Program-made: the position numbers and the translations under genes
The notes under the pieces: model-generated
Database searches by the model: none
What the model saw: only the letters and a program-made list of their open reading frames with translations
What the model was told of the DNA's origin: nothing
From: Obrimoposthia wandeli
Lineage: Eukaryota
Assembly: GCA_977020255.1 (NCBI GenBank)
Contig: CDROCS010005249.1
Location: 1 to 64,000, forward strand
Length of the DNA: 64,000 bases
Reading direction: 5' to 3'
Shown: in pieces, positions 2,343-15,456 of the stretch
Numbering within the stretch: the stretch's first letter is position 1
Layout of the letters: the number at the start of each line of letters is the position of its first letter

Positions 2343-3536
2343 ATGATTATTAAACCAAAAATTCGTGGCTTTATCTGTACAACAACCCATCCAGAGGGTT
2401 GTGCATCAAATGTGCGTGAGCAAATACAATATGTTCAGCAAAAGGGTGAAGTAGCAGGTGGTCCAAAGCGGGTCCTGATTGTTGGTGCATCAAGTGGCTA
2501 TGGCTTGTCATCGCGTATAGCAGCAGCTTTTGGTAGTGGTGCGGCAACGATAGGTGTTTTTTTTGAAAAACCAGCATCTGAAACTAAGCCTGGAACAGCA
2601 GGCTGGCACAATAGTGCTGCATTTACAATGGAAGCAGAAAAAGCCGGTTTATATGCTAAAAGCCTAAACGGCGATGCGTTTAGTGATGAAGCGAAGCAAA
2701 AGACGATTGAGCTGATAAAAGAAGATTTAGGTCAAATTGACTTAGTTGTCTATTCTTTGGCATCTCCAGTACGAAAAATGCCTGAAACAGGCGAAGTGGT
2801 TAGATCAACACTAAAGCCAATTGGTAATTCATATGAATCAACGGCGATAAATACTAATAAGGATACCTTATTTAGTGCACAAGTTGAGCCTGCCACCGAG
2901 CAAGAAATTGCCGATACGGTAACGGTAATGGGTGGAGACGACTGGCAGCGTTGGATTGATGCCTTAATGGATGCAGATGTTTTAGCGCCGGGTTGTAAAA
3001 CAGCAGCTTATAGCTATATGGGTTCAGATATTACTTGGCCAATTTATTGGCATGGAACAATTGGTCGCGCCAAGCAGCACGTTGATGAGATTGCAGCTGT
3101 TTTAAATACTAAGATGCAAGGTATTGGCGGACAGGCAAATGTTGCTGTGTTGAAATCAGTCGTTACTCAAGCGAGTTCTGCAATACCTGTTATGCCGTTA
3201 TATTTATCTATGGTGTTTAAGGTCATGAAAGAAAGTAATGTTCATGAAGGATGCATGGAGCAAATTGATCGCTTATTCCGCACGGGTCTTTATTCAGATG
3301 ATGTTGTTTATGATGAAGGCAATCGCTTTCGTATGGATGATTGGGAGCTGCGCGATGATATACAAGCACGTTGTAAAGATATCTGGGCAAAAGTAACAGA
3401 TGAAAATGTATTCGAAATTACAGATTATGCCTATTATAAGTCAGAATTTTTGAAGCTGTTTGGTTTTGATATCGATAGCATTGATTATGAAAAAGATGTT
3501 GAAACATTAGTGCCTTTTGATGTTATAGATATCTAA
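2343..3536 (+). CDS. fabV: Enoyl-ACP reductase FabV (trans-2-enoyl-CoA reductase family)
   Basis: [21 protein letters not shown]-terminus, GASSGYG nucleotide-binding motif, [11 protein letters not shown] catalytic Y/K segment; 397 aa. Confidence 0.96.
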
Positions 3537-5054: not shown

Positions 5055-5471
5055 AGGTATTAACGTCGCCTTTTAAGCCTCTTAGAAAGGCTTAGTCATC
5101 TTGTTAATAGCTCTAGCTTTCAAGCTAGCTCTGCGCTGGCTCTTTTAAACAGGCTCTAATTTTGCTTTATGGTCTGTTTTTTTAACGCATTAATGATCTA
5201 TTTTGATTAAATGACGTCACAGTTTTTGTAAAAAAACACTTGACTAAGGTAATCTTAAGAACATCAATTAACTGTTTGATATTCATACAAAATTACCTAT
5301 ATTATAAGTGCGACGAAAAGATATGGCCACTCGGTATATACTTGAAGGTTTGACTTCCCAAAAGATGCGATCTAAAGTTATCTTATCGTTATTCCTATCC
5401 ATCCACATTACATGTGCTCTGCTATAAATTTGTTTATTTTGATCAGTGATTTTTATAAAAGTGGTGTATAA

Positions 5472-7910
5472 ATGATTGAAGCATTTGCTCTTCAGGTTAT
5501 TATTTATTCGATATTTCCGTTTTACCTAGCCCGACTTGAAAAACCAACCAGAACAGTCGCATTTTATATTTACATCAGTGTTTCCCTTTTTTTGGGCGGC
5601 TTTATCGGCTCAGTCCTATCTATACCTATTTCAGACACTATCAATATATCAGCAGGAAACCTTTCTTATGGTGCTGTAATGATGACCAGTATATTGTTCG
5701 TCATTATCGAGCGCGATCTATTTATTATTAGAGGGATAGTTCGTTTAGTCATTACGGTTAACATTTTCAAAATTTTAATCTTCTCTGCCATCGGGTGGAG
5801 CTTAGCAAAAGAGGGGGTCATTAATCCGAACAACACATCTGCTTCTATTTTTAAGGTGTCGGTATGGTTCACAGTACTCGGAGGTGTTTTGATCATAAGC
5901 GAGCTTACTGTTTTACTCTATCTATTTGATAAATTAAAGAAATCTATTAAAAGCAGTTTTAAACTATCGATAGCTTACATATCAGCGTTCGTAATAGTGA
6001 TATGCCTTGATGGGGTTCTGTTTCCAAGCATAGCATTTGGTTTTAGCGATAGACTAATAGACTTTGTTGTAGGTGGCGTGAAAGGAAAGTTAATAATGGC
6101 AAGTGCCTATAGTATTCCTATGGCAATATTTCTTTATCTTAATAGAGAAATACTTGCAGAATATGCTTCAGACCCTCCTTTTGCTTGGCGCCACTTACTT
6201 GTGTCAAGTGAAGAGTTGATGCGCAATATACATAAGAATGACGAGCGACTTAAGCAGGCGGCCGTGGTTTTCGATAATACGCGTGAAGGTATTGTTTTAA
6301 CCAATTCAGACTTTGCTATCATTAGTATTAATAATGCGTTTACAAAACTAACGGGGTTTACTGAAAAAAAAGTGATTAGCGGGGCTCTTAAGTTGAATCA
6401 GATTGTCGAGTTTTCCCATGAATCAGAGATGCTAGTCCATAGGGCTCTTTCGACAGATCACTATTGGCAGGGCGAAATTACCTACAATAATAAGTCTGGC
6501 GTTAGTTTTTCAGCGTTATTTTCTATCAATTTAATAGAGGATGCGCAAAGGAAAAAAAATACCTATGTAGGTGTCATAACAGACATTAGCGAGATAAAAC
6601 ATGTACAAGAGCAGCTTACTTACCTTGCTAATCATGACTCACTGACAAAGCTATCCAATAGGCGGCATTTAATAGAGCACTTAGATATGTCCCTCATTGC
6701 AGCACAGTGCAACCAAAAACAACTGGCTCTGTTAATTATCGATCTGGATAACTTTAAAGATGTAAATGACAGCTACGGTCATACATTTGGGGATGAGTTG
6801 CTAGTAGATATCTCGACAACGTTACAAAACAACACGGGTGAATCTGATCTCTTGTGTCGAATTGGTGGAGATGAGTTTGCATTACTATTAGTGAATCTTA
6901 ATGAGCCAGAAGAGGCGAGTCATATGGCGATGAAGCTCATGGACGTTATTAGTGGTTCATGGAAGCTCACTAACGGTCTGAGTGTCCATTTAGGAGCTAC
7001 AGTGGGTATAAGTATTTATCCTGATCACGGTAATACGACAACGTTATTACTTCAACATGCAGATTCCGCGTTATATAGTGCAAAAAATAAACAGCGAGGA
7101 TCATTTCAATTCTTTACAGAGAGCATGACGATAATTGCTCGTAATAGAATAGAGCAAGGATATCAATTGCGAAAATGTATCAGGGATGAGCATTTAGAAG
7201 TATTTTATCAGCCGCAAGTAAATTTTAAGACAGGTGAGGTATATGGAGCAGAAGCTCTCGTTAGATGGAATGATCCAATAAAGGGCTATATTCTACCTGG
7301 CGACTTTATACCGCTTGCAGAAGAAACGGGTTTAATTAATATCATTGGTGCGCAGGTCTTGAAGAAAGCCTGCCAGCAAGGTAAAGAATGGCTTGATGAA
7401 GGGGTAAGGCCTATACAATTGTCAGTTAATATATCTGCCCACCAACTTCGTCATGGTGATATTGTTGGTACGCTAAAATCAATTTTGAAAGAAACAGGGT
7501 TTCCCGCTAAGTCTCTTGAATTAGAGCTAACAGAAAGCTCGTTAATGGAGAGGGAGAGACAAGTGGCTCCTGTCTTGGAAAAGTTTAAAGAAATGGGTAT
7601 TAGTTTAGCTATTGATGATTTTGGAACAGGTTATTCGTCATTGTCATACTTAAAAGACTTCCCAATAAACACGCTGAAAATTGACAAAAGCTTCATTGAT
7701 GGAATCCCAAATGATAATGATAATATGGTCCTGACATCTACGATTATATCTATGGGTAAAAATCTAGGCTATATGGTTATTGCTGAAGGTGTTGAGAAAG
7801 TAGAACAGTTTGATTGTTTAAGAGCAATGGAATGTGATTCGTTTCAAGGATATTTAAAGAGCAGTGCTGTACCCGCCAAGGAGTTTATCAAAATTATACA
7901 TAAGACATAG
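5472..7910 (+). CDS. Membrane-anchored PAS-GGDEF-EAL protein with a VUT/YhhQ-like N-terminal membrane domain
   Basis: HDSLTKLSNR, IDLDNFKDVNDSYGH, RIGGDEF, EALVRW and DDFGTGYSS motifs are intact; PAS at about aa 265-375; about 225-aa hydrophobic N-terminus. Confidence 0.92.
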   Translation: MIEAFALQVIIYSIFPFYLARLEKPTRTVAFYIYISVSLFLGGFIGSVLSIPISDTINISAGNLSYGAVMMTSILFVIIERDLFIIRGIVRLVITVNIFKILIFSAIGWSLAKEGVINPNNTSASIFKVSVWFTVLGGVLIISELTVLLYLFDKLKKSIKSSFKLSIAYISAFVIVICLDGVLFPSIAFGFSDRLIDFVVGGVKGKLIMASAYSIPMAIFLYLNREILAEYASDPPFAWRHLLVSSEELMRNIHKNDERLKQAAVVFDNTREGIVLTNSDFAIISINNAFTKLTGFTEKKVISGALKLNQIVEFSHESEMLVHRALSTDHYWQGEITYNNKSGVSFSALFSINLIEDAQRKKNTYVGVITDISEIKHVQEQLTYLANHDSLTKLSNRRHLIEHLDMSLIAAQCNQKQLALLIIDLDNFKDVNDSYGHTFGDELLVDISTTLQNNTGESDLLCRIGGDEFALLLVNLNEPEEASHMAMKLMDVISGSWKLTNGLSVHLGATVGISIYPDHGNTTTLLLQHADSALYSAKNKQRGSFQFFTESMTIIARNRIEQGYQLRKCIRDEHLEVFYQPQVNFKTGEVYGAEALVRWNDPIKGYILPGDFIPLAEETGLINIIGAQVLKKACQQGKEWLDEGVRPIQLSVNISAHQLRHGDIVGTLKSILKETGFPAKSLELELTESSLMERERQVAPVLEKFKEMGISLAIDDFGTGYSSLSYLKDFPINTLKIDKSFIDGIPNDNDNMVLTSTIISMGKNLGYMVIAEGVEKVEQFDCLRAMECDSFQGYLKSSAVPAKEFIKIIHKT

Positions 7911-7930: not shown

Positions 7931-9600
7931 AGCCCCCTGTGTCAGGCTAGTTGTCGCCTCTAATTATTAGTTAGAGGTAATTGTAATGAAGAGATCTTTT
8001 ACTCAATCATTTAAAATACAATCAGTTGAAAAAGCCTTAAATCGAAGTGCTGGTACTACTTTAAAAGAAGTGGCTATCGCATTGAACATGGGTGAATCCA
8101 CTTTAAATAAATGGATAATCAAAGCCAGAAATCAAGAGTTTGAAATGGTTTCATCTAAAGAAAGATTGATCGCGTGACCAAGAGAAAAGATCTCATGAAT
8201 GGACAGCAGAAGAGCGGTTAAAGAGCGGTGGGCAAGGCAAGTGCTTCTTAGAAGAAGAGTCAATTAATGAGCTCTGTCGTGAAATGGGTATTTATCCGCA
8301 TCATGTTCAACAGTGGGAAACTTGATTTCATTACTGGCAGCTCTGGTAATAACAAACAGATACACGATCTGAAGTTAAAACGCTTAAGCATGAAAACAAA
8401 AACACTAAAAAGAAATAAATCGTAAAGATAGAGCATTAGCAGAAACAGCAGCACTATTGGTTCTCCAAAAAAAAAAGTACAAGAGATATGGGTCGGGACG
8501 AGGACAACTGATTAATGAATACTGAGCGCCAGGAAATAATAGGATCTGATTACACAGGCAAAAACACTGGCGCCAGACAAAAAGAAAGCCTGTGAGATTA
8601 TAGGAATAAGTGCCAAAACGATTCAGCGTTGGGAAGCATCAACCAGTCATGAAAGATGGTTTTGATTGCTAAGCATGCTCCAAAAAACAAGCTATCTAAA
8701 ATGGAGTATCAACGCGTCTCCAAGTAGCCAATAGCCCTGAATACGGGCATTTACCGCCTAGTCAAATGGTGCCAAAGCTTGTTGATATGGCATATACATT
8801 GCCTCAGAAGCCACTGTGTATCGAATATTGAATAAGCGAAAGCAGCTTAAACATCACACAAAAGTAAAGTGACCAACAAAAGGCACAAGCCAAGAGCGCT
8901 AATATTAGCAACGAGCCCAAACGAAGTTTATACGTGGGATATAACCTACTTACCGACTCAAATTAAGGGCGTTTTGTATATTTGTATTTGGGTACTTGAT
9001 GTGTTTAGTCGAAAAAATTGTCGGCTGGCAGGTTCACAGCGAAGAGCTGAGTGCGCTTGCCGCTGATATGATGAAAGATATTTGTTATAAAGAAAAAATA
9101 AAGCCCAATCAGGTGGTGCTACATTCAGATAATGGTAGCCCGATGAAAGGACAATGCTAGCGACCTGCAGGAATTAGGCGTAGTACCTTCATTTAGCAGG
9201 CCATCGGTGAGTAACGATAATCCTTATTCAGAATCCGTGTTTAGACATTGAAATACCGCTCAGAATACCCTGAAAGTGCCGTTTTCAGATATCAACAGCT
9301 CGGCAATGATGTTGCTAAAGGCTTTGTGCATTGGTACAACAATGAGCATCTGCACAGTCGCATTAAATTTGTCACCCCTCCTCAGCGCCACAGTGGAAAG
9401 ACATCGAAATATTACTCCAATAGAAAGAAACTATGTAGCTGAAAAAGCTAAGAACCCGATAAGATGGTCAGGCGATGTTAAAAACTGGGACTATATTGAT
9501 GAAGTTCATCTGAACCCAGAGAAAGAAAAAACTAAGGATGAAAATGAAGTGGCGGCATAAAATTAAACTTTAGGCGACAACTCCCTTGAAAAACACCGTT
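7931..9600 (+). mobile_element. Decayed IS3-family insertion sequence (ends approximate)
   Basis: Imperfect terminal inverted repeats sharing AGTTGTCGCCT (7949-7959) / AGGCGACAACT (9572-9582); OrfA HTH plus fragments of a DDE integrase core. Confidence 0.82.
7986..9560 (+). pseudogene. IS3-family transposase OrfA/OrfB, multiply frameshifted
   Basis: Fragments MKRSFTQSFKIQ (HTH), PNEVYTWDITYLPT, LHSDNGSPMKG, SRPSVSNDNPYSESVFR, WYNNEHLHSRIKFVTP lie in different frames. Confidence 0.88.
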
Positions 9601-9707
9601 AGGGAGCCTATGATTTTGTGTATTCTATCCACGGTATTTTAAACGACAATAAACACAGTGGCCCGCATCCGGTTTTATGAATTCAATCCTAAAACGCTAT
9701 TTTTATT

Positions 9708-10988
9708 CACTAGTGTCCGGTTTAAAAAAAGATGTAAGGCTATAGAGCATTAACCTCGGGAATTACGGTAAAATTGTTGTTACCTAGACAGCTATTTTCC
9801 CAACCAGAGGTTAAGCGTGAAACATTCTAACAGTATTTTCTACCAACTATTGAAATTTATTCCCCGTCATACCTTCCAAAAAGCAGTTGATCGACATAAG
9901 GGCGATCATCGCATAAGAACTCTTTCATGCTGGGATCAGCTAGTCGCCTTACTCTTTGCACAGCTTAATAATCAGACTTCGTTAAGAGGTATTGAAACGA
10001 CATTTAACAGCCAAAAATCTAAACTTTATCATCTAGGTGCGAATCGTATCAGCCGCTCATCGTTAGCTGATGCCAACGGCAATAGGTCCTCTGCTATTTT
10101 CAGTGAAATACTCTATTTCTTGCTCAGTAAGGTGCGCTCAAAACTGCCTAGAAGTGATGCGGGACAAATGATAAGGTTGATTGATTGAACGACGATTGAT
10201 TTGAATCTTAATCAATTTAAGTGGGCAAAGTTTCGATAAAAGAAAGCAGGGATAAAGCTTCATACCGTGTACGACCCTAATGCCGCAGTCCCTGTTTATT
10301 TTTCATTAACAGAGGCTAAAACAAATGATGCTAAAGAACTAAACAACCTGCCGATGATGCCAAACACGACCCATATTGTTGATCGTGCTTATAATAATTA
10401 CAGTTGGTTTTATTCATTGAATCAGGATAACTCTATATTTGTTGGTCGAATGAAGACAAACACTTGCTATCAAGTAGTGGAAAAAAGGTTCCTATAGGAA
10501 TGGGAGTCGCTGCAGATGAAATTATTCGACTAAGCAGTGCTAAAGGAAAGAAGCTCTGCCCAATTGATTTACGCCGCGTTACCTTTGCTCGAGAAGAAGA
10601 TCAAAAAGAGCTGGTATTTATTACCAACGATTTATCGCGTTCAGCGGTTGAGGTTGCTGCATTATATAAACAGCGCTGGGAAATAGAATTGTTTTTTAAG
10701 TGGATAAAAAAAACCTAAAAATAAAACGTTTTATCAGCCAAAATAAAAACGGTGTGATGATTCAAATATTGATAGCACTCATATCCAACCTGCTACTAAA
10801 GTTGACACAATTAACATACTTGAGCAAGCAAACACTCTATCAGATATGCCTATTAATTGGTGCAAACCTGATGGAGCGTAGAGGTATGATGGAGTTGCTA
10901 AATCCATTTTTAAAACGGCTGAAACCAGACAAAAACAGCGTGGAACAAATGAATTTGGGGCTTTTAAATGTTTAACCGGACACTAATG
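9708..10988 (+). mobile_element. IS4-family insertion sequence, 1281 bp, decayed
   Basis: TIRs CACTAGTGTCCGGTTTAA (9708) and, on the reverse strand, CATTAGTGTCCGGTTAAA (ending 10988); no matching target-site duplication. Confidence 0.88.
9817..10975 (+). pseudogene. IS4-family transposase (DUF4372-type N-terminus), with nonsense codons and frameshifts
   Basis: MKHSNSIFYQLL...CWDQLVALLFAQL; LID*TTIDL (TGA) and KFR*KKAGIKLH (TAA) in frame; IVDRAY; LYKQRWEIELFFKWIK signature. Confidence 0.9.
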
Positions 10989-11823
10989 AAGCTATTAATT
11001 AAAACGCTGCACGTTTTAGGTTTAAAATTGTCAAATCGCAAGCTGTTCTGGATTTATCTAAATAATTTTTTAATGTATCTTTTGTTAATTGCTGATCATT
11101 AAAGAGAGCATATAAATCAATAGTTATTTCATTTAACCTTGAAATTCCTGTCAGGCTGATGCCTACGGGGGTATTTATCTCATGAGCAACGCCCGCTACT
11201 AAATCTCCCAAGACAATCATTTTTTGCGCGGCGACTAACCTGTCTCTGGTTTGTTTTAAATCATTGATTGTATGAGCAAGCTCTTGATTAGATTTTGATA
11301 ACTCTTTATTTTTTTGTTTATTTAAAGATTCTAATGACTTTTTTTCATGGATATTCCTACATATCATATGTAGGGCAGTATCATTTTTAAATTCAATCCC
11401 TGTGATCACGATTTCTAACCAAATGATCTCTCCATTTAAACGCTTAGATTGCCATTCGAATCTAGCAGAACCAGTAGTGTTAGCTTGTTTTAAGTAATCA
11501 GCCATTTTTACTAAAGATAGTTCGCCATCATACTGATAAGTAGGGGCTATGCTACCTGCTTTAGTTGTCAGTAACGCTTGTATATCTGGATAGCCAAATA
11601 ATGTGACAGCGGCGGTATTTACAGCCACATAAACACCATCATTGATCAATATCATTGCATCTGAGCTTTGCTCAAACAGCTTTTCAAATTTTGTATTGTT
11701 TTGTACTTGCTTGCTATTATGAGCCTTGAGCCTTTTTAGTTTTATCAGTAGCGCTACAACACAAGCGACTAACGCTACCAAAAGCACCAACAAAGCAGTT
11801 ACAAGCGGATTATTCATACGCAA
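10989..11823 (-). pseudogene. TM-PAS sensor histidine kinase truncated after the HisKA domain by the IS4 element
   Basis: N-terminal TM helix, PAS (LFEQSSDAMILI...FEWQSKRLNGEIIWLEI), H-box VAGVAHEINTPVG; no HATPase domain. Confidence 0.85.
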
Positions 11824-12160
11824 AAAACTCTATGTAGAAATAAAAAAGTTCCTTTCTAAAAGGCGTTTTATTAATGAAGTCAGCATCGTTTTTTATAGAT
11901 GTGTGCAAAGAAAAACAAGAAAACATTGAAGAATTAATAGGTGGTAAGTAGTAGTAAAACAATCTAAATTTTGTATTAATAGTCATCTAAGTACCTATTT
12001 GTTTAACTTAAATAAAAAGTCTATTTTAAATAGCCAACAAGTTCTTATGCTACTAGTGTCGTCTTTGACGAAGGTATTGGAAATATTTGTAAAAGCACGT
12101 ACAGTAAATTATAAGTTTAATAGAAATCAAATAAAGGTAGCCTAAATTATTAAACTTTTC

Positions 12161-12220
12161 GTCACCTCGCCCCGCAAAGTGAAGCTGAGCGTAGCGAGAG
12201 AGCTTTCCTGGGGATCTTTA
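12161..12220 (-). repeat. Degenerate REP-like/composite repeat related to 20245-20300 and 47381-47446
   Basis: Reverse strand TAAAGATCCCCAGGAAAGCTCTCTCG resembles TAAAGATCCCCGGGATAAGTCCTCTCG at 20245; CTTCACTTTG is shared with 25316. Confidence 0.55.
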
Positions 12221-12510
12221 ATGAACATTACAGCTCATAAAGGTTTTCATTTTTAGGCTGTGTGGTGGATCAGTGTTTGGATAACGTTGCATTAATACAA
12301 AGTAAGTTTTGCAAAAAGGAGTAAAAATAGTTAATTGAGAATTAACTTCAAAAAAACCAAAAAGTAGAATCGCTATTTTTTATTACGTAGAATGTTAGCT
12401 CTTTAAGTAAGCAAAGCGAGTGCTTATTAAAGCACTGGGGACGACAGACTGAGTTTTACCCAGTTATAATTGCTAGGAGATTAGCACTAAGTCCTGCACA
12501 GGCCCATGAT

Positions 12511-15456
12511 CTACACGATGATTTCTAGAGGGAGTAAAACTTCCAGTTTAAAACCTTTAGCTGAGCTTTTAGCAAGGCTTAGATCTCCTTGTAAGGTCTG
12601 CGTGATTAAGTTGTAAACTATATGCCCTCCTAATCCGCTGCCTCCGTCACCACGTGTGGTGGTATAAAAAGGCTCAAACATTTTAGCTTTGCTCTCTTCA
12701 GTTAGCCCGACTCCCCAATCAGAGTATTTAATGAGTAACCCAGCCCTGGATTGAGTGGCTTCTATAGACACTTTTCCTTGCTGTAACGGTTGGTAACCAT
12801 GAATGGAGCTGTTCATTAGCAGGCATCCTAATACTCTTGAAATAACACTTGGATAGCTATTTAAAGTTAAGCTTGGGTCGCAATTAAATTCTACTGTTAT
12901 ATTATCCAAATTACATTTTGCTTTGATCTCTTGTAAGCTGCTGTGGAGTAGCTTAGCTAATAAAAATACTTTTTGCTCTTCGCTGGATAAATCGACCGCA
13001 ACCTGTTTAAAATTTGTGACTAAATCTGCAGTTTTTTTAATGTTTTTAATCGCTAAACTATTAGCTGCTTGGATTTGTTTTAAAAATTTATCCATGTCAT
13101 TTTTTGATACTTTTTGCTGTAAATAATTATCTTCAAATGTTCTATGTTGATCTTCTAATTTAGATACAGCTGTTAATATAATGCCGACAGGTGTGTTTAT
13201 CTCGTGGGCAACGCCTGCTACTAAATTGCCTAATGAAGCCATTCTATCTGCTTCTACTAACTGGTGTTGGGTATTGCGCAGTTGCGCTAAGGTGTTGGAT
13301 ATTTCAGTATTTGCTTGAGATAACTCTTGCGTACGAGAGAGTACTCGCGTTTCTAGTTCATCATTTAGTTCTTTCAACGACTGCTTGGCTTTATTGGTTA
13401 AATCTTGTTCTTGTTCCAACTGCTCAATGGTTAATTGCTGCTGTTGGGAATGATCTTCTAATAGCTTTTGCTTATCTTGAAAGTAATCTACTTTTTCTAA
13501 CAGTTCATCAGGGGAAAGTTGAGATTCAGCTAACAGCTGAGAATAGCTAACTTGTAGTTTTTGCTGTTCCGATTCACTAATTAGATTGAGTTGTTGGATA
13601 GAGCGATTGGCACTGGCCATGCCGATGATCCCAGCAAGTAACCCTGTTACATCAGATCTTAGTTTAGCTAACTGTAATATGTTAACTTTACTGTCATTGC
13701 TGAGGTCATTCTCCTCAAAATATTTATTGAGCTTTTCACGAGCGGCTTGCTTGCCTAAGTATCTTGCAAATAGGGATAAAAGTCGGCGATATTTTGCAGC
13801 CAAAGAAATATCAGCGGCCATTTTAGTTTTTAAGGCTATGTGCGCTTCTCCAGCGCCTATCCTGATAAACTCTTGGCTGTGGGCCAATTCTTCAGAAGAC
13901 CGGTTAGAAAAGTAATGTGAGACCATCACGTAAAGAGAGCAGTTCACGAATAGCGTCCAAAAAAAACTGTGTGCTGTTGATGATTGTAAAGTAACGCCAA
14001 ATAAGTTCTCTGGGCGTAACCAGTAGTATGAAAATAAACCATTCATTAAAATGTCATTACTAAACCAACCGCTCGCTATAAGAGCGGGCAAAAGTGAGGT
14101 ATAGCCCCACAATAAGGCCCCACCTGATACGCCGGCAATTGCACCTTGTAAAGTGCCTTTTTTCCAAATTATTGCGCCGACTAATATGGGTAATAATTGT
14201 GCGATTGCAATGAACGAAATAGAGCCTATTTTTACAAGAATAGCTGATTCGCCAACACTTCTATAAAACAATAAGCTCAGAAATATAATTAATGCGACAA
14301 CTAACCAACGTACTATCAGTAAATATCTTCGAAAGAAACGCAGCACTGGAAGAACTTCTAGCACAGGTACAACTATATGATTTGTCGCCATAGTAGATAA
14401 AGTCATTGCACTGATCATTATCATCCCGGTGCTTGCTGTGAAGCCGCCTAAAAACACCAGTGCAGAAATATTTGAATGGCCTGTATTTATCGGAAATTCT
14501 AATAAGACTAAATCAACCATATAATTCTCTGGCAAAGACAATGTGCCGGCCATAGCAATTGGAATTACAAAGAAATTAATTAAGAGTAGATAGAGCGGAA
14601 ATTGCCATTTTGCTTTATCAATTAATTTCTCATTAGTGCATTCAACAATACCTACATGGAACTGACGCGGCATTGCTAAAACACCAACAATACCTAAAAT
14701 AATTCCAGCAAACCATCCAGAAGGAGATGGAGGAGAGCTGAAGGGAGAAGTGAGTAGATCAAAACTAGCTTTGGACTCAACCTGGTAAATAATATCGCTA
14801 GGACCGTCAAATAATACAAAACAAATGAGAATAGCAGCGATGAGAAAAGCTACCATTTTAAAAACACCTTCGGCCGCTAAAGCGACCATCATGCCAGGGT
14901 GTCGTTCGGTTGGGTCTAATTTTCTGACACCGAATGCAATGGTAAAAATAATGATAAAAACTAAAATTATAATTTCTAATCGTTCAGTGATCTCATCACT
15001 GCTTTGTGATTGACCCGTTAGTAGATTAAAAGCACTAAAAATTGATTTAAACTGAATCAAAATATAAGGAATTATACCGATAAGGCAAAGTAGGCTAATA
15101 ATGGCTGCAAGTAGATATGAGTTATTGTATCGAGTAGAAATAAAATCCGCGATGCTGGTAGAGTGATAGTAAGTTTTGATCCTAACCATTCGCTTTAAAA
15201 GTGGCGAAAAAAACACATAAGCTAAAGTGCTACCCAGGAATAAAGCAATATGGTTAATCCCTTGACCTGTTGCTTGGCCTATATTGCCGTAATATGTCCA
15301 AGATGTGCAAAAAACGGCTAAACTGAGAGAATAAGTAATAGCTGAATTTTTGACTTTAAGAACCAGTATTGAATTTGAATCACCCCATAATGCAATTAAA
15401 AATAAGATAAAAAAATACACTATAATCAGCACAAAGACCCAATAAATAGAAAACAT
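12511..15456 (-). CDS. Sodium:solute symporter (SLC5)-STAC-histidine kinase (CbrA/CrbS-like)
   Basis: About 520-aa multi-TM SSS-like region (YSLSLAVFCTSWTYYG, PRQFHVGIVE); STAC-like ARYLGKQAA...LLAGIIGMASA; coiled coil; H-box AHEINTP; N, G1, F and G2 boxes (LMNS, DWGVG, FEPFYTT, GGSGLG). AGGAG RBS. Confidence 0.92.
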   Translation of the reverse strand: MFSIYWVFVLIIVYFFILFLIALWGDSNSILVLKVKNSAITYSLSLAVFCTSWTYYGNIGQATGQGINHIALFLGSTLAYVFFSPLLKRMVRIKTYYHSTSIADFISTRYNNSYLLAAIISLLCLIGIIPYILIQFKSIFSAFNLLTGQSQSSDEITERLEIIILVFIIIFTIAFGVRKLDPTERHPGMMVALAAEGVFKMVAFLIAAILICFVLFDGPSDIIYQVESKASFDLLTSPFSSPPSPSGWFAGIILGIVGVLAMPRQFHVGIVECTNEKLIDKAKWQFPLYLLLINFFVIPIAMAGTLSLPENYMVDLVLLEFPINTGHSNISALVFLGGFTASTGMIMISAMTLSTMATNHIVVPVLEVLPVLRFFRRYLLIVRWLVVALIIFLSLLFYRSVGESAILVKIGSISFIAIAQLLPILVGAIIWKKGTLQGAIAGVSGGALLWGYTSLLPALIASGWFSNDILMNGLFSYYWLRPENLFGVTLQSSTAHSFFWTLFVNCSLYVMVSHYFSNRSSEELAHSQEFIRIGAGEAHIALKTKMAADISLAAKYRRLLSLFARYLGKQAAREKLNKYFEENDLSNDSKVNILQLAKLRSDVTGLLAGIIGMASANRSIQQLNLISESEQQKLQVSYSQLLAESQLSPDELLEKVDYFQDKQKLLEDHSQQQQLTIEQLEQEQDLTNKAKQSLKELNDELETRVLSRTQELSQANTEISNTLAQLRNTQHQLVEADRMASLGNLVAGVAHEINTPVGIILTAVSKLEDQHRTFEDNYLQQKVSKNDMDKFLKQIQAANSLAIKNIKKTADLVTNFKQVAVDLSSEEQKVFLLAKLLHSSLQEIKAKCNLDNITVEFNCDPSLTLNSYPSVISRVLGCLLMNSSIHGYQPLQQGKVSIEATQSRAGLLIKYSDWGVGLTEESKAKMFEPFYTTTRGDGGSGLGGHIVYNLITQTLQGDLSLAKSSAKGFKLEVLLPLEIIV

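What the first reader, a model, noticed from the sequence alone, without database searches (positions are those of the whole stretch)
5472..6150. Diguanylate cyclase/phosphodiesterase whose input domain looks like a VUT/YhhQ (queuosine-precursor) transporter
Seen: the ~225-aa membrane N-terminus has the ordered features IPIS..ISAGNLSYGAVMMTSIL / IRGIVRLVI / ISELTVLLYLFDKLKK / CLDGVLFPSIAFG / GKLIMASAYSIPMAIFL. These line up in order and spacing with E. coli YhhQ as I recall it (LPVS..TTWGAFSFPFIFLATDL / ARRIIFAV / GQILDVHVFNRLRQ / SDTLAFFFIAFW / FKVLISIVFFLPMYGVL). Downstream PAS, GGDEF and EAL catalytic motifs are intact, and the RxxD I-site is absent (GESD). Established: YhhQ (Vut_1) imports preQ0/preQ1. 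Inference: a transporter fold repurposed as a receptor that couples a deazapurine or other micronutrient to c-di-GMP. I know of no characterised example.
Basis: partly seen in the sequence, partly recalled or inferred. Interest (0 to 1): 0.75.

Follow-up and report, generated by a model that had tools for sequence, protein, structure and literature searches.

The report
Transporter-like VUPS sensor on c-di-GMP enzyme

Summary
Window 5472-7910 (+) is one intact 812-aa ORF: a 7-helix membrane domain, PAS, GGDEF and EAL.

The N-terminal domain is a member of Pfam PF20973, VUPS ("Vitamin uptake-like sensor"), at 70 bits against a cut-off of 27. It does not hit Vut_1 (PF02592) directly.

Four lines of evidence here support homology to Vut_1/YhhQ:
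- Profile-profile alignment gives P 1.6e-5 over 175 columns; reversed and shuffled controls are null.
- One natural histidine kinase hits both models.
- An AF2 model matches a Vut_1 cluster at TM 0.67/0.70, and its top PDB matches are ECF S-components.
- Protein-language-model neighbours are all Vut_1.

Asp180, Lys206 and a helix-4 acidic residue are kept. Several residues that are conserved only in the transporters are lost.

No link to queuosine was found: no conserved neighbours and no riboswitch. The transporter-fold-turned-receptor idea is published for 5TMR-LYT (Partipilo & Slotboom 2024). No characterised VUPS protein was found in the searchable literature.

Verdict: correct reading, known domain family, ligand unknown, modest interest.

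The parts
5472..7910 (+). Complete ORF, 812 aa: VUPS-PAS-GGDEF-EAL inner-membrane c-di-GMP turnover protein
   Evidence: ORF list; Pfam domains. Orthologues are 67-83% identical over the N-terminal 240 residues; a Psychromonas MAG copy is 70% identical over residues 1-809.
5475..5528 (+). Helix H0 (residues 2-19), an extra N-terminal transmembrane helix in front of the 6-helix core
   Evidence: AF2 models. It is not covered by the structural alignment to a Vut_1 cluster, which spans residues 23-226. 5TMR-LYT receptors carry the same kind of addition (PMC11109136).
5544..6134 (+). VUPS domain (Pfam PF20973, residues 25-221): six-helix core with the VUT/ECF-S-component fold
   Evidence: Pfam 70.1 bits against a cut-off of 27. 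AF2 pLDDT 89.7. Atlas Vut_1 cluster TM 0.67/0.70. PDB: RibU 3p5n Z 9.6, BtuM Z 9.0. hhalign to Vut_1 P 1.6e-5.
5901..5903 (+). Glu144, acidic residue inside helix 4 (E or D in every VUPS branch examined)
   Evidence: Conservation tables.
6009..6011 (+). Asp180 in helix 5, invariant in VUPS; aligns with the invariant Asp154 of Vut_1 (the IDT motif)
   Evidence: hhalign residue map; family-wide check.
6087..6089 (+). Lys206 at the outer end of helix 6, 98% conserved; aligns with Lys186 of Vut_1
   Evidence: hhalign residue map; family-wide check.
6141..6278 (+). Juxtamembrane linker (residues 224-269): short helix 225-233, a Pro-Pro break, then helix 246-269 leading into PAS
   Evidence: AF2 model of residues 1-385, pLDDT 84.5, pTM 0.62.
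6285..6593 (+). PAS domain (PAS_9, residues 272-374)
   Evidence: Pfam E 7.5e-12; PAS fold in the AF2 model.
6627..7097 (+). GGDEF domain (residues 386-542), with an intact GGDEF motif at 465-469 (nt 6864-6878)
   Evidence: Pfam E 1.2e-43; alignment to MorA 4rnh; motif scan.
6837..6848 (+). I-site position (residues 456-459) reads GESD instead of RxxD
   Evidence: Motif scan: orthologues P0001-P0004, P0006, P0007 and P0010 keep RETD/REVD/RGVD.
7167..7859 (+). EAL domain (residues 566-796) with all catalytic motifs present
   Evidence: Pfam E 4.1e-71; alignment to MorA; EALVR at 594 and DDFGTG at 715.
5073..5095 (+). Terminator-like hairpin after the upstream GlxA/AraC-type regulator gene, suggesting the VUPS gene has its own promoter in 5100-5470
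   Evidence: Consensus scan only; the number of sites is not above the shuffle expectation.

Best explanation
The gene encodes an inner-membrane c-di-GMP turnover enzyme. Its input module is a VUPS domain.

The VUPS domain:
- It is a six-helix bundle homologous to VUT-family secondary carriers (YhhQ/Vut_1) and, more distantly, to ECF S-components.
- One extra transmembrane helix (H0) precedes the bundle. This puts the N-terminus outside and the C-terminus inside the cell.

Shown here:
- The domain order.
- Membership of PF20973.
- Homology and shared fold with Vut_1.
- Retention of an Asp (helix 5), a Lys (helix 6) and an acidic residue (helix 4).
- Intact GGDEF and EAL catalytic motifs.
- Loss of the I-site arginine in this copy only.

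Inferred mechanism:
- The former substrate pocket, in the outer half of the bundle around Asp180 and Lys206, binds a small extracytoplasmic or membrane-soluble ligand without carrying it across.
- The resulting shift of helix 6 passes through the juxtamembrane helix and the PAS domain to the GGDEF-EAL pair.
- This changes the balance between c-di-GMP synthesis and hydrolysis.
- The output pair is most like bifunctional MorA and PDE-type enzymes such as DosP and DibA.

The ligand is unknown and is probably not the one carried by YhhQ. The gene is an accessory, horizontally mobile one; it is not part of a conserved operon.
For: Domain identity:
- Pfam VUPS 70.1 bits (cut-off 27), plus PAS_9, GGDEF and EAL.
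- VUPS is N-terminal in all 49 full-domain homologues. It is fused to GGDEF-EAL, GGDEF alone, EAL alone, histidine kinases and hybrid kinases, as expected of an input module.

Homology to Vut_1:
- hhalign P 1.6e-5 over 175 columns, with null reversed and shuffled controls.
- Eleven identical pairs of jointly conserved residues, including D82/D57, R91/R69, D180/D154, K206/K186 and P216/P196.
- The kinase L085:286-2178:- hits both VUPS (50.5 bits) and Vut_1 (23.3 bits, E 9e-5).
- The Pfam VUPS model cross-hits genuine 222-275-aa Vut_1 genes at 20-29 bits.
- Language-model neighbours are all Vut_1 once VUPS clusters are excluded.

Fold:
- AF2 pLDDT 89.7.
- Vut_1 cluster TM 0.67/0.70 over 199 residues.
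- RibU, BtuM, BioY, FolT, ThiT and PanT head the PDB list at Z 7-9.6, covering residues about 21-230.

Topology: K+R residues concentrate in the loops predicted to be cytoplasmic.

Output domains: MorA 4rnh E 1.3e-97 with all motifs aligned; motif scan.

Precedent: S-component-fold receptors with an added H0 helix; the pyruvate sensor BtsS binds its ligand in the membrane domain (PMC11109136).
Against: - No ligand, binding assay or phenotype exists for any VUPS protein that I could find.
- No conserved neighbouring gene points to a ligand.
- The linker between helix 6 and PAS is not one continuous helix, and the interdomain confidence is low (pTM 0.62). The transmission path is therefore conjecture.
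- Foldseek against the PDB gave nothing significant.
- The VIA Z scores of 8-9.6 lie in the range that helical bundles can reach by chance (note).
- The PAS domain could be the real sensor.
Confidence: 0.7

Rival explanations
1. The VUPS domain is mainly a membrane anchor and dimerisation scaffold, or it reports a physical state of the membrane (lipid composition, fluidity, proton-motive force) and not a specific small molecule. The cytoplasmic PAS domain would then be the real ligand or redox sensor.
For: - A PAS domain follows directly.
- No gene neighbourhood hints at a ligand.
- The helix 6 to PAS linker is kinked and not a rigid transmission helix.
- The organism carries very many PAS-GGDEF-EAL paralogues with other N-termini, so membrane placement may be the variable feature.
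Against: - A plain anchor would not be expected to keep buried charged residues. D180 is invariant, K206 is 98% conserved, and position 144 is E or D across phyla and across different output domains.
- It would also not be expected to keep glycine-rich helix faces and conserved outer-loop residues (N118, P119, S60, G62).
- About half of the VUPS proteins listed have no PAS hit (for example P0026, P0029 and P0040-P0045).
Confidence: 0.18
2. One reading: the domain binds a queuosine precursor (preQ0, preQ1 or queuine) or a related 7-deazapurine, and so couples its availability to c-di-GMP.
For: - The closest transporter family by sequence profile, fold and language-model features is Vut_1. Its characterised member YhhQ imports preQ0/preQ1 (PMC5372724, seen; RefSeq annotation).
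- The Asp/Lys pair shared with Vut_1 is kept.
Against: - Positions highly conserved in Vut_1 are replaced in VUPS: S27, N28, Q123 and D126 by aligned position, while P50, G64 and W140 have no conserved counterpart.
- No Vut_1 hit at E<=10.
- No gene recurs next to VUPS across genera in the 66 loci; the neighbours were clustered but not annotated, so queuosine genes were not looked for by name.
- No Rfam family, preQ1 riboswitch included, in the window.
- 4 of 5 VUPS genomes tested also have an ordinary Vut_1 gene.
- VUPS has diversified into branches only about 30-40% identical, which suggests several ligands.
Confidence: 0.06
3. The domain still transports a substrate, so the protein is a transporting receptor whose flux or occupancy sets the enzyme's activity.
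For: - Conserved charged residues are kept on both faces of the membrane, as in the carriers: D82 and R91 at the inner face, D180 and K206 in the outer half.
- One true 222-aa Vut_1 carrier scores above the VUPS cut-off, so the two families are not sharply separated.
Against: - The extra H0 helix and the large cytoplasmic extension of helix 6 are the features argued to block carrier movements in the analogous 5TMR-LYT receptors (PMC11109136).
- Several carrier-specific conserved residues are lost.
Confidence: 0.06

Closest known systems
Pfam PF20973 VUPS (Vitamin uptake-like sensor) domain family
   Same: - Scores 70-73 bits against a cut-off of 27 over model positions 10-206 of 206.
- N-terminal position.
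- Same partner domains as other members: PAS, GGDEF, EAL, HisKA/HATPase, REC.
- An ESM Atlas cluster of 144 proteins has this same VUPS+GGDEF+EAL make-up and matches the model at TM 0.91.
   Different: - This branch is a divergent one. Other VUPS genes score 168-289 bits on the same model; this one scores 70.
- It has DG where those have DT or DS at positions 180-181.
- To my knowledge the family has a database entry but no experimental study.
VUT family / Vut_1 (PF02592), e.g. E. coli YhhQ, the preQ0/preQ1 importer
   Same: - Six-helix core with the same fold (TM 0.67/0.70).
- Profile-profile alignment over nearly the whole length.
- Shared conserved G, D, R, F, D, F, A, F, K and P positions, including the helix-5 Asp and helix-6 Lys.
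   Different: - No direct Pfam hit and no pairwise similarity (E 1.8).
- Extra H0 helix.
- Fused to about 590 residues of signalling domains instead of standing alone at about 220 aa.
- Carrier-specific residues S27, N28, P50, G64, Q123, D126 and W140 are not kept.
- Not next to queuosine genes.
5TMR-LYT (PF07694) receptors such as BtsS, YpdA and LytS; 'S-component fold' transceptors (Partipilo & Slotboom 2024, PMC11109136)
   Same: - Same design principle: a micronutrient-transporter fold of six helices plus an added N-terminal H0 gives 7 TM helices.
- Helix 6 continues into cytoplasmic signalling domains, which include PAS, GGDEF and EAL.
   Different: - No PF07694 hit at E<=10.
- This domain's nearest transporter relatives are VUT secondary carriers, not ECF S-components (TM 0.67-0.70 against 0.45-0.52).
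- The paper does not mention VUT, YhhQ or VUPS.
P. aeruginosa MorA and other GGDEF-EAL tandem enzymes (DosP, DibA, RbdA/PA0861)
   Same: - The output half aligns to MorA 4rnh at E 1.3e-97 with GGDEF and all EAL motifs conserved.
- NCBIfam best partial matches are DibA, DosP and PdeR-type phosphodiesterases.
   Different: - All NCBIfam scores lie below the equivalog cut-offs, for example DibA 543 against 980.
- The input domains differ: none of those proteins has a VUPS domain as far as these searches show.

Membership tests
Pfam PF20973 VUPS | Score at or above the curated gathering threshold of the family model | tested here: met
   70.1 bits (whole protein) and 73.4 bits (residues 1-240) against a cut-off of 27; 73.3 bits in the six-frame genome search.
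Pfam PF20973 VUPS | Membrane domain at the N-terminus of a signal-transduction protein, followed by cytoplasmic output domains | tested here: met
   Order VUPS 25-221, PAS 272-374, GGDEF 386-542, EAL 566-796; the same layout in all 49 full-domain homologues.
Pfam PF20973 VUPS | Helical bundle resembling vitamin-uptake transporters | tested here: met
   AF2 model pLDDT 89.7; Vut_1 cluster TM 0.67/0.70; ECF S-components at the top of the PDB list. These are predicted structures only.
VUT / Vut_1 (PF02592), YhhQ-type carriers | Score at or above the Pfam gathering threshold (27.2 bits) | tested here: not met
   No Vut_1 hit even at E<=10 for the full protein or for residues 1-240.
VUT / Vut_1 (PF02592), YhhQ-type carriers | Same fold and detectable remote homology | tested here: met
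   hhalign P 1.6e-5 over 175 columns with null controls; bridging protein L085; TM 0.67/0.70.
VUT / Vut_1 (PF02592), YhhQ-type carriers | Family-conserved residues (S27, N28, G45, P50, D57, G64, R69, Q123, D126, W140, D154, F158, K186, P196 in the numbering of L012) | tested here: not met
   Kept: G45, D57, R69, D154, F158, K186, P196. Replaced or unmatched: S27, N28, P50, G64, Q123, D126, W140.
VUT / Vut_1 (PF02592), YhhQ-type carriers | Stand-alone protein of about 190-280 aa that imports preQ0/preQ1 | not testable with these tools
   The protein has 812 aa with signalling domains, so it is not stand-alone. Transport needs an uptake or complementation assay.
5TM-5TMR_LYT (PF07694), MASE and MHYT sensor domains | Match to the family model | tested here: not met
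   Only VUPS is reported for residues 1-240 at E<=10.
ECF transporter S-component | Six-helix S-component fold | tested here: inconclusive
   RibU Z 9.6, BtuM 9.0, BioY 8.0, FolT 7.7, ThiT 7.5 over about 150-170 residues. Atlas TM is only 0.45-0.52 and Foldseek PDB gave nothing at E<=0.001.
ECF transporter S-component | AxxxA motif in helix 1 for docking to the ECF module (PMC11109136, section heading) | tested here: not met
   Helix 1 (residues 26-48, printed) contains no AxxxA.
GGDEF diguanylate cyclase | GG[DE]EF active-site motif and the upstream metal- and GTP-binding residues | tested here: met
   GGDEF at 465-469; the DLDNFKDVND region aligns with MorA. Enzyme activity was not assayed.
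GGDEF diguanylate cyclase | RxxD inhibitory I-site five residues before the GGDEF motif (not obligatory for the family) | tested here: not met
   GESD at 456-459; orthologues have RETD, REVD or RGVD.
EAL c-di-GMP phosphodiesterase | Catalytic motifs EALxR, N, ExxE, DDFGTG, KxD, EGVE and Q | tested here: met
   All are present and aligned with MorA 4rnh; EALVR at 594 and DDFGTG at 715. Enzyme activity was not assayed.

The most novel reading that the evidence does not exclude
The VUPS domain could be a true micronutrient receptor derived from a VUT secondary carrier. It would use the retained helix-5 Asp, helix-6 Lys and helix-4 acidic residue to bind a 7-deazapurine (preQ0, preQ1 or queuine) or a similar vitamin-like base outside the cell. 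A marine bacterium would then set its c-di-GMP level, and so its choice between biofilm and motility, by the supply of a shared tRNA-modification precursor. This would be a second, independent transporter-to-receptor conversion beside ECF-S to 5TMR-LYT, and the first link between queuosine salvage and c-di-GMP.
Probability: 0.07. Interest if true: 0.7.

Novelty: new member of a known kind. Interest (0 to 1): 0.3.

Why it matters
c-di-GMP enzymes are numerous, but the signals feeding most of them are unknown. VUPS is one of the input domains with no known ligand.

This work adds a tested statement that VUPS descends from VUT/YhhQ-type carriers. It keeps an Asp/Lys/acidic core, gains an H0 helix and loses several residues conserved only in the carriers. 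That gives concrete residues to mutate (E144, D180, K206) and a defined ligand class to screen.

It also shows that the design reported for 5TMR-LYT receptors (PMC11109136) has a counterpart on the VUT side of the fold.

For the scan itself, the finding is a correct reading of a domain that is already catalogued. It is not a new system.

Tried and rejected
- Pairwise BLASTP of the N-terminus against E. coli YhhQ gave nothing (E 1.8).
- The first, shallow profile comparison (43 VUPS against 6 Vut_1 sequences) gave only a weak C-terminal match (E 0.049, probability 1%). It became clear only with deeper alignments.
- The word-based protein search with a Vut_1 query returned only Polaribacter proteins at least 83% identical. 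It added no diversity, so I took diverse Vut_1 genes from genome searches instead.
- Foldseek against the PDB found no match at E<=0.001.
- Profiles of VUPS and of Vut_1 find no solved structure by sequence.
- Neighbourhood clustering of 317 genes lying within three genes of the VUPS gene, in the 66 loci and the window, showed only genus-level synteny (Pleomorphomonas, Sulfitobacter) and other signalling genes. No partner is shared across genera.
- Rfam finds nothing in the window.
- Four literature searches found no paper that mentions VUPS or a YhhQ-like sensor.
- I had assumed the organism was a Psychromonas. This is rejected: its FabV is only 63-65% identical to Psychromonas genomes.
- The large representative-protein search was not run.
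- The read-mapping tools were not used.
Full report
**What is there**

Window 5472..7910 (+) is a single open frame of 812 codons. Pfam places four domains on it:
- VUPS (PF20973, "Vitamin uptake-like sensor"), residues 25-221, E 2.6e-19, 70.1 bits against a curated cut-off of 27.
- PAS_9, residues 272-374.
- GGDEF, residues 386-542.
- EAL, residues 566-796.

Scanned alone, the first 240 residues hit only VUPS (73.4 bits). At E<=10 there is no hit to Vut_1 (PF02592) and none to any MASE, MHYT or 5TMR-LYT model. NCBIfam has no model for the N-terminus. It gives only sub-threshold matches of the output half to DibA, DosP and PdeR-type phosphodiesterases.

**Check of the observation**

The five quoted stretches of the membrane domain are in the translation, in the stated order. 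I fetched E. coli yhhQ from RefSeq and translated it. The first differs only in LPIT against LPVS.

Pairwise BLASTP between the two proteins shows nothing (E 1.8), so the likeness is not above chance at single-sequence level.

On the output side:
- GGDEF is intact at 465-469.
- The EAL motifs are all present and align residue for residue with P. aeruginosa MorA (4rnh, E 1.3e-97).
- The I-site position 456-459 reads GESD. The close orthologues P0001-P0004, P0006, P0007 and P0010 have RETD, REVD or RGVD there. The arginine was therefore lost in this lineage, not in the family.

**Is the membrane domain really related to YhhQ-type carriers?**

Five independent lines say yes.

1. Profile against profile.
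   - A shallow comparison (43 VUPS domains against 6 Vut_1 proteins taken from other bacterial contigs of the same assembly) gave only a weak C-terminal match.
   - With 103 VUPS domains and 35 diverse Vut_1 proteins drawn from genome searches, hhalign aligns 175 columns locally. Probability is 79%, P 1.6e-5 and score 41.5.
   - In global mode it aligns 204 columns.
   - The reversed template gives 18.3 over 13 columns. Twenty column-shuffled templates give at most 10.6.
2. Conserved residues. Of 20 aligned positions that are at least 70% conserved in both families, 11 carry the same residue. These include D82/D57, R91/R69, F152/F130, D180/D154 (invariant in both), F184/F158, K206/K186 and P216/P196.
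3. A bridging sequence. A 631-aa histidine kinase of an Anaerolineales MAG (L085:286-2178:-) hits VUPS at 50.5 bits. It also hits Vut_1 at 23.3 bits (E 9e-5) over nearly the whole Vut_1 model. In the other direction, the Pfam VUPS model hits genuine 222-275-aa Vut_1 genes at 20-29 bits. One of these is above the VUPS cut-off (same coordinates).
4. Fold.
   - An AlphaFold2 model of residues 1-240 is confident (pLDDT 89.7, pTM 0.87).
   - In the ESM Atlas, beyond VUPS clusters, it matches a "queuosine precursor transporter" cluster (Vut_1 in 100% of members) at TM 0.67/0.70 over 199 residues.
   - ECF riboflavin-type and BioY clusters follow at TM 0.45-0.52.
   - In an exhaustive comparison with PDB representatives, ECF S-components head the list: RibU Z 9.6, BtuM 9.0, TmRibU 9.0, BioY 8.0, FolT 7.7, ThiT 7.5, and also PanT and CbiM. 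All cover residues about 21-230.
   - Taken singly, these Z values are in the range helical bundles can reach by chance. The agreement among the hits is what counts.
   - Foldseek against the PDB gave nothing significant.
   - No VUT protein has a solved structure detectable by sequence.
5. Language-model neighbours. With VUPS clusters left out, they are all Vut_1 (scores 0.80-0.86). This is a lead, not proof.

**What differs from the carriers**

- The model has an extra N-terminal helix (H0, residues 2-19) that the Vut_1 alignment does not cover.
- With the output domains necessarily cytoplasmic, this gives a 7-TM topology with the N-terminus outside and the C-terminus inside.
- Lys and Arg concentrate in the loops predicted to be inside: residues 20-28, 81-91 and 153-164.
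- Positions strongly conserved in Vut_1 but not kept in VUPS are S27, N28, P50, G64, Q123, D126 and W140.
- Conserved across every VUPS branch I looked at are G137, an acidic residue at 144, D180, F184 and K206. Those branches are this one, four high-scoring VUPS genes on 29-31% GC contigs of the same assembly, and the bridging kinase.
- By the topology, D180 and K206 lie in the outer half of helices 5 and 6, and E144 lies in the core of helix 4. I could not measure distances, because model coordinates are not exposed to scripts.

**Distribution and context**

- Among the 50 hits to residues 1-240, 49 carry the full domain, and it is N-terminal in each (the 50th matches only the last 65 residues). 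It is joined to PAS-GGDEF-EAL, GGDEF alone, EAL alone, histidine kinases and hybrid kinases.
- A pattern scan of one genome per species found 66 loci. They come from Gamma- and Alphaproteobacteria, Desulfobacterota, Chloroflexota, Acidobacteriota, Actinomycetota, Spirochaetota, Cyanobacteria and Bipolaricaulota.
- In an even sample of 301 Pseudomonadota genomes, 11 have a VUPS match above the cut-off. None of the 14 control genomes has one.
- Clustering the genes within three positions of the VUPS gene showed only genus-level synteny. No partner is shared across genera.
- In the window, the upstream genes are a LuxR-type regulator, a UDG-family protein, FabV and a GlxA/AraC-type regulator. Downstream lie two decayed insertion sequences.
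- The closest orthologue (P0001, 83% identical over the N-terminal 240 residues) sits in quite different, island-like surroundings: a toxin-antitoxin pair, a transposase, an integrase fragment and a type I restriction system.
- Only 1 of 41 Psychromonadaceae genomes sampled has a full-length orthologue, at 70% identity. A second has it broken.
- No Rfam family, preQ1 riboswitches included, matches anywhere in the window.
- Four of five VUPS-bearing genomes tested also have an ordinary Vut_1 gene.

**Mechanism**

Shown: the architecture, the family membership, the homology and fold, the retained and lost residues, and the intact catalytic motifs.

Inferred:
- The former substrate pocket now binds a ligand without translocating it.
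- Movement of helix 6 is passed through a short juxtamembrane helix (225-233), a Pro-Pro break and the PAS N-cap helix (246-269) to PAS and the GGDEF-EAL pair (model of residues 1-385: pLDDT 84.5, pTM 0.62).

The low interdomain confidence and the kinked linker leave this path conjectural. The output pair resembles bifunctional MorA. Orthologues keep an I-site, so the cyclase half was probably active ancestrally. This copy, lacking the I-site arginine, would escape product inhibition if it is a cyclase.

**Comparison with what is known**

- The same architecture forms a 144-member ESM Atlas cluster.
- Partipilo and Slotboom (Commun Biol 2024, PMC11109136) published the concept for 5TMR-LYT kinases. 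They describe a six-helix S-component fold plus an added H0 helix, with helix 6 running into PAS, GGDEF, EAL or kinase domains, and a binding site near the outer face.
- That paper does not mention VUT, YhhQ or VUPS.
- I found no paper in the searchable library that names VUPS or describes an experiment on such a protein. Subscription journals are not covered.
- That VUPS may share a Pfam clan with Vut_1 and the ECF S-components is my recollection only. I could not check it here.

**Verdict**

The deazapurine-sensing part has no support and some evidence against it. This is a new member of a known kind, of modest interest. Its main value is a defined set of residues and a ligand class to test on an input domain whose signal is unknown.

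Noticed in passing
window 7986-9560 and 9817-10975: Two decayed insertion sequences lie directly downstream of the VUPS gene. The first is an IS3-like element split into short frames (an HTH-type orfA at 7986-8177 and integrase-core fragments at 8869-9442). The second is an IS4-type transposase broken into three ORFs (DUF4372 at 9817-10188, a DDE_Tnp_1 fragment at 10464-10718, and a tail at 10700-10975). The IS3 assignment rests on my reading of the translations, not on a family scan.
   Followed up: partly
window 10999-11823 (-): A 274-aa ORF has one TM segment, a PAS domain and the start of a kinase dimerisation region, but no HATPase domain. It abuts the decayed IS4 element, so it looks like a histidine kinase gene truncated by the insertion.
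   Followed up: partly
G000 as a whole; L001-L004, L006, L007-L014: The window's assembly is 1.35 Gb in 6912 contigs and plainly holds several different bacteria beside a large host genome. There are five more VUPS loci on 29-31% GC contigs. One of them (L006) is broken by five stops. Another (L001) lies in an open frame of 3655 aa on a contig longer than 1.18 Mb. There are at least seven Vut_1 genes, one of them 92% identical to Polaribacter proteins.
   Followed up: partly
L085:286-2178:- (Anaerolineales bacterium UBA6055): This 631-aa PAS histidine kinase has an N-terminal domain that scores on both Pfam VUPS (50.5 bits) and Vut_1 (23.3 bits, just under the cut-off). It is a natural intermediate between the sensor and carrier families.
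   Followed up: yes
L074 / L116 (Psychromonas sp. KJ10-2 chromosome, about 1558360-1560650): The orthologue in this complete genome is broken inside the VUPS domain. It is in two pieces of 164 and 653 aa, and the genome search reports two TAA stops.
   Followed up: partly
window 2343-3536 compared with 5472-7910: FabV of the window is only 63-65% identical to Psychromonas genomes and 68-70% to some more distant relatives. The VUPS protein is 70% identical (full length) to a Psychromonas MAG copy. Together with the IS remnants and the island-like context of the closest orthologue (L121), this suggests the gene moves horizontally.
   Followed up: partly
L053 (Gynuella MAG), 7968-10403 and 10579-12993: Two VUPS-bearing genes of about 800 aa sit in tandem. 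The second is much more diverged from the window's branch.
   Followed up: no
I did not examine it.
   Followed up: no
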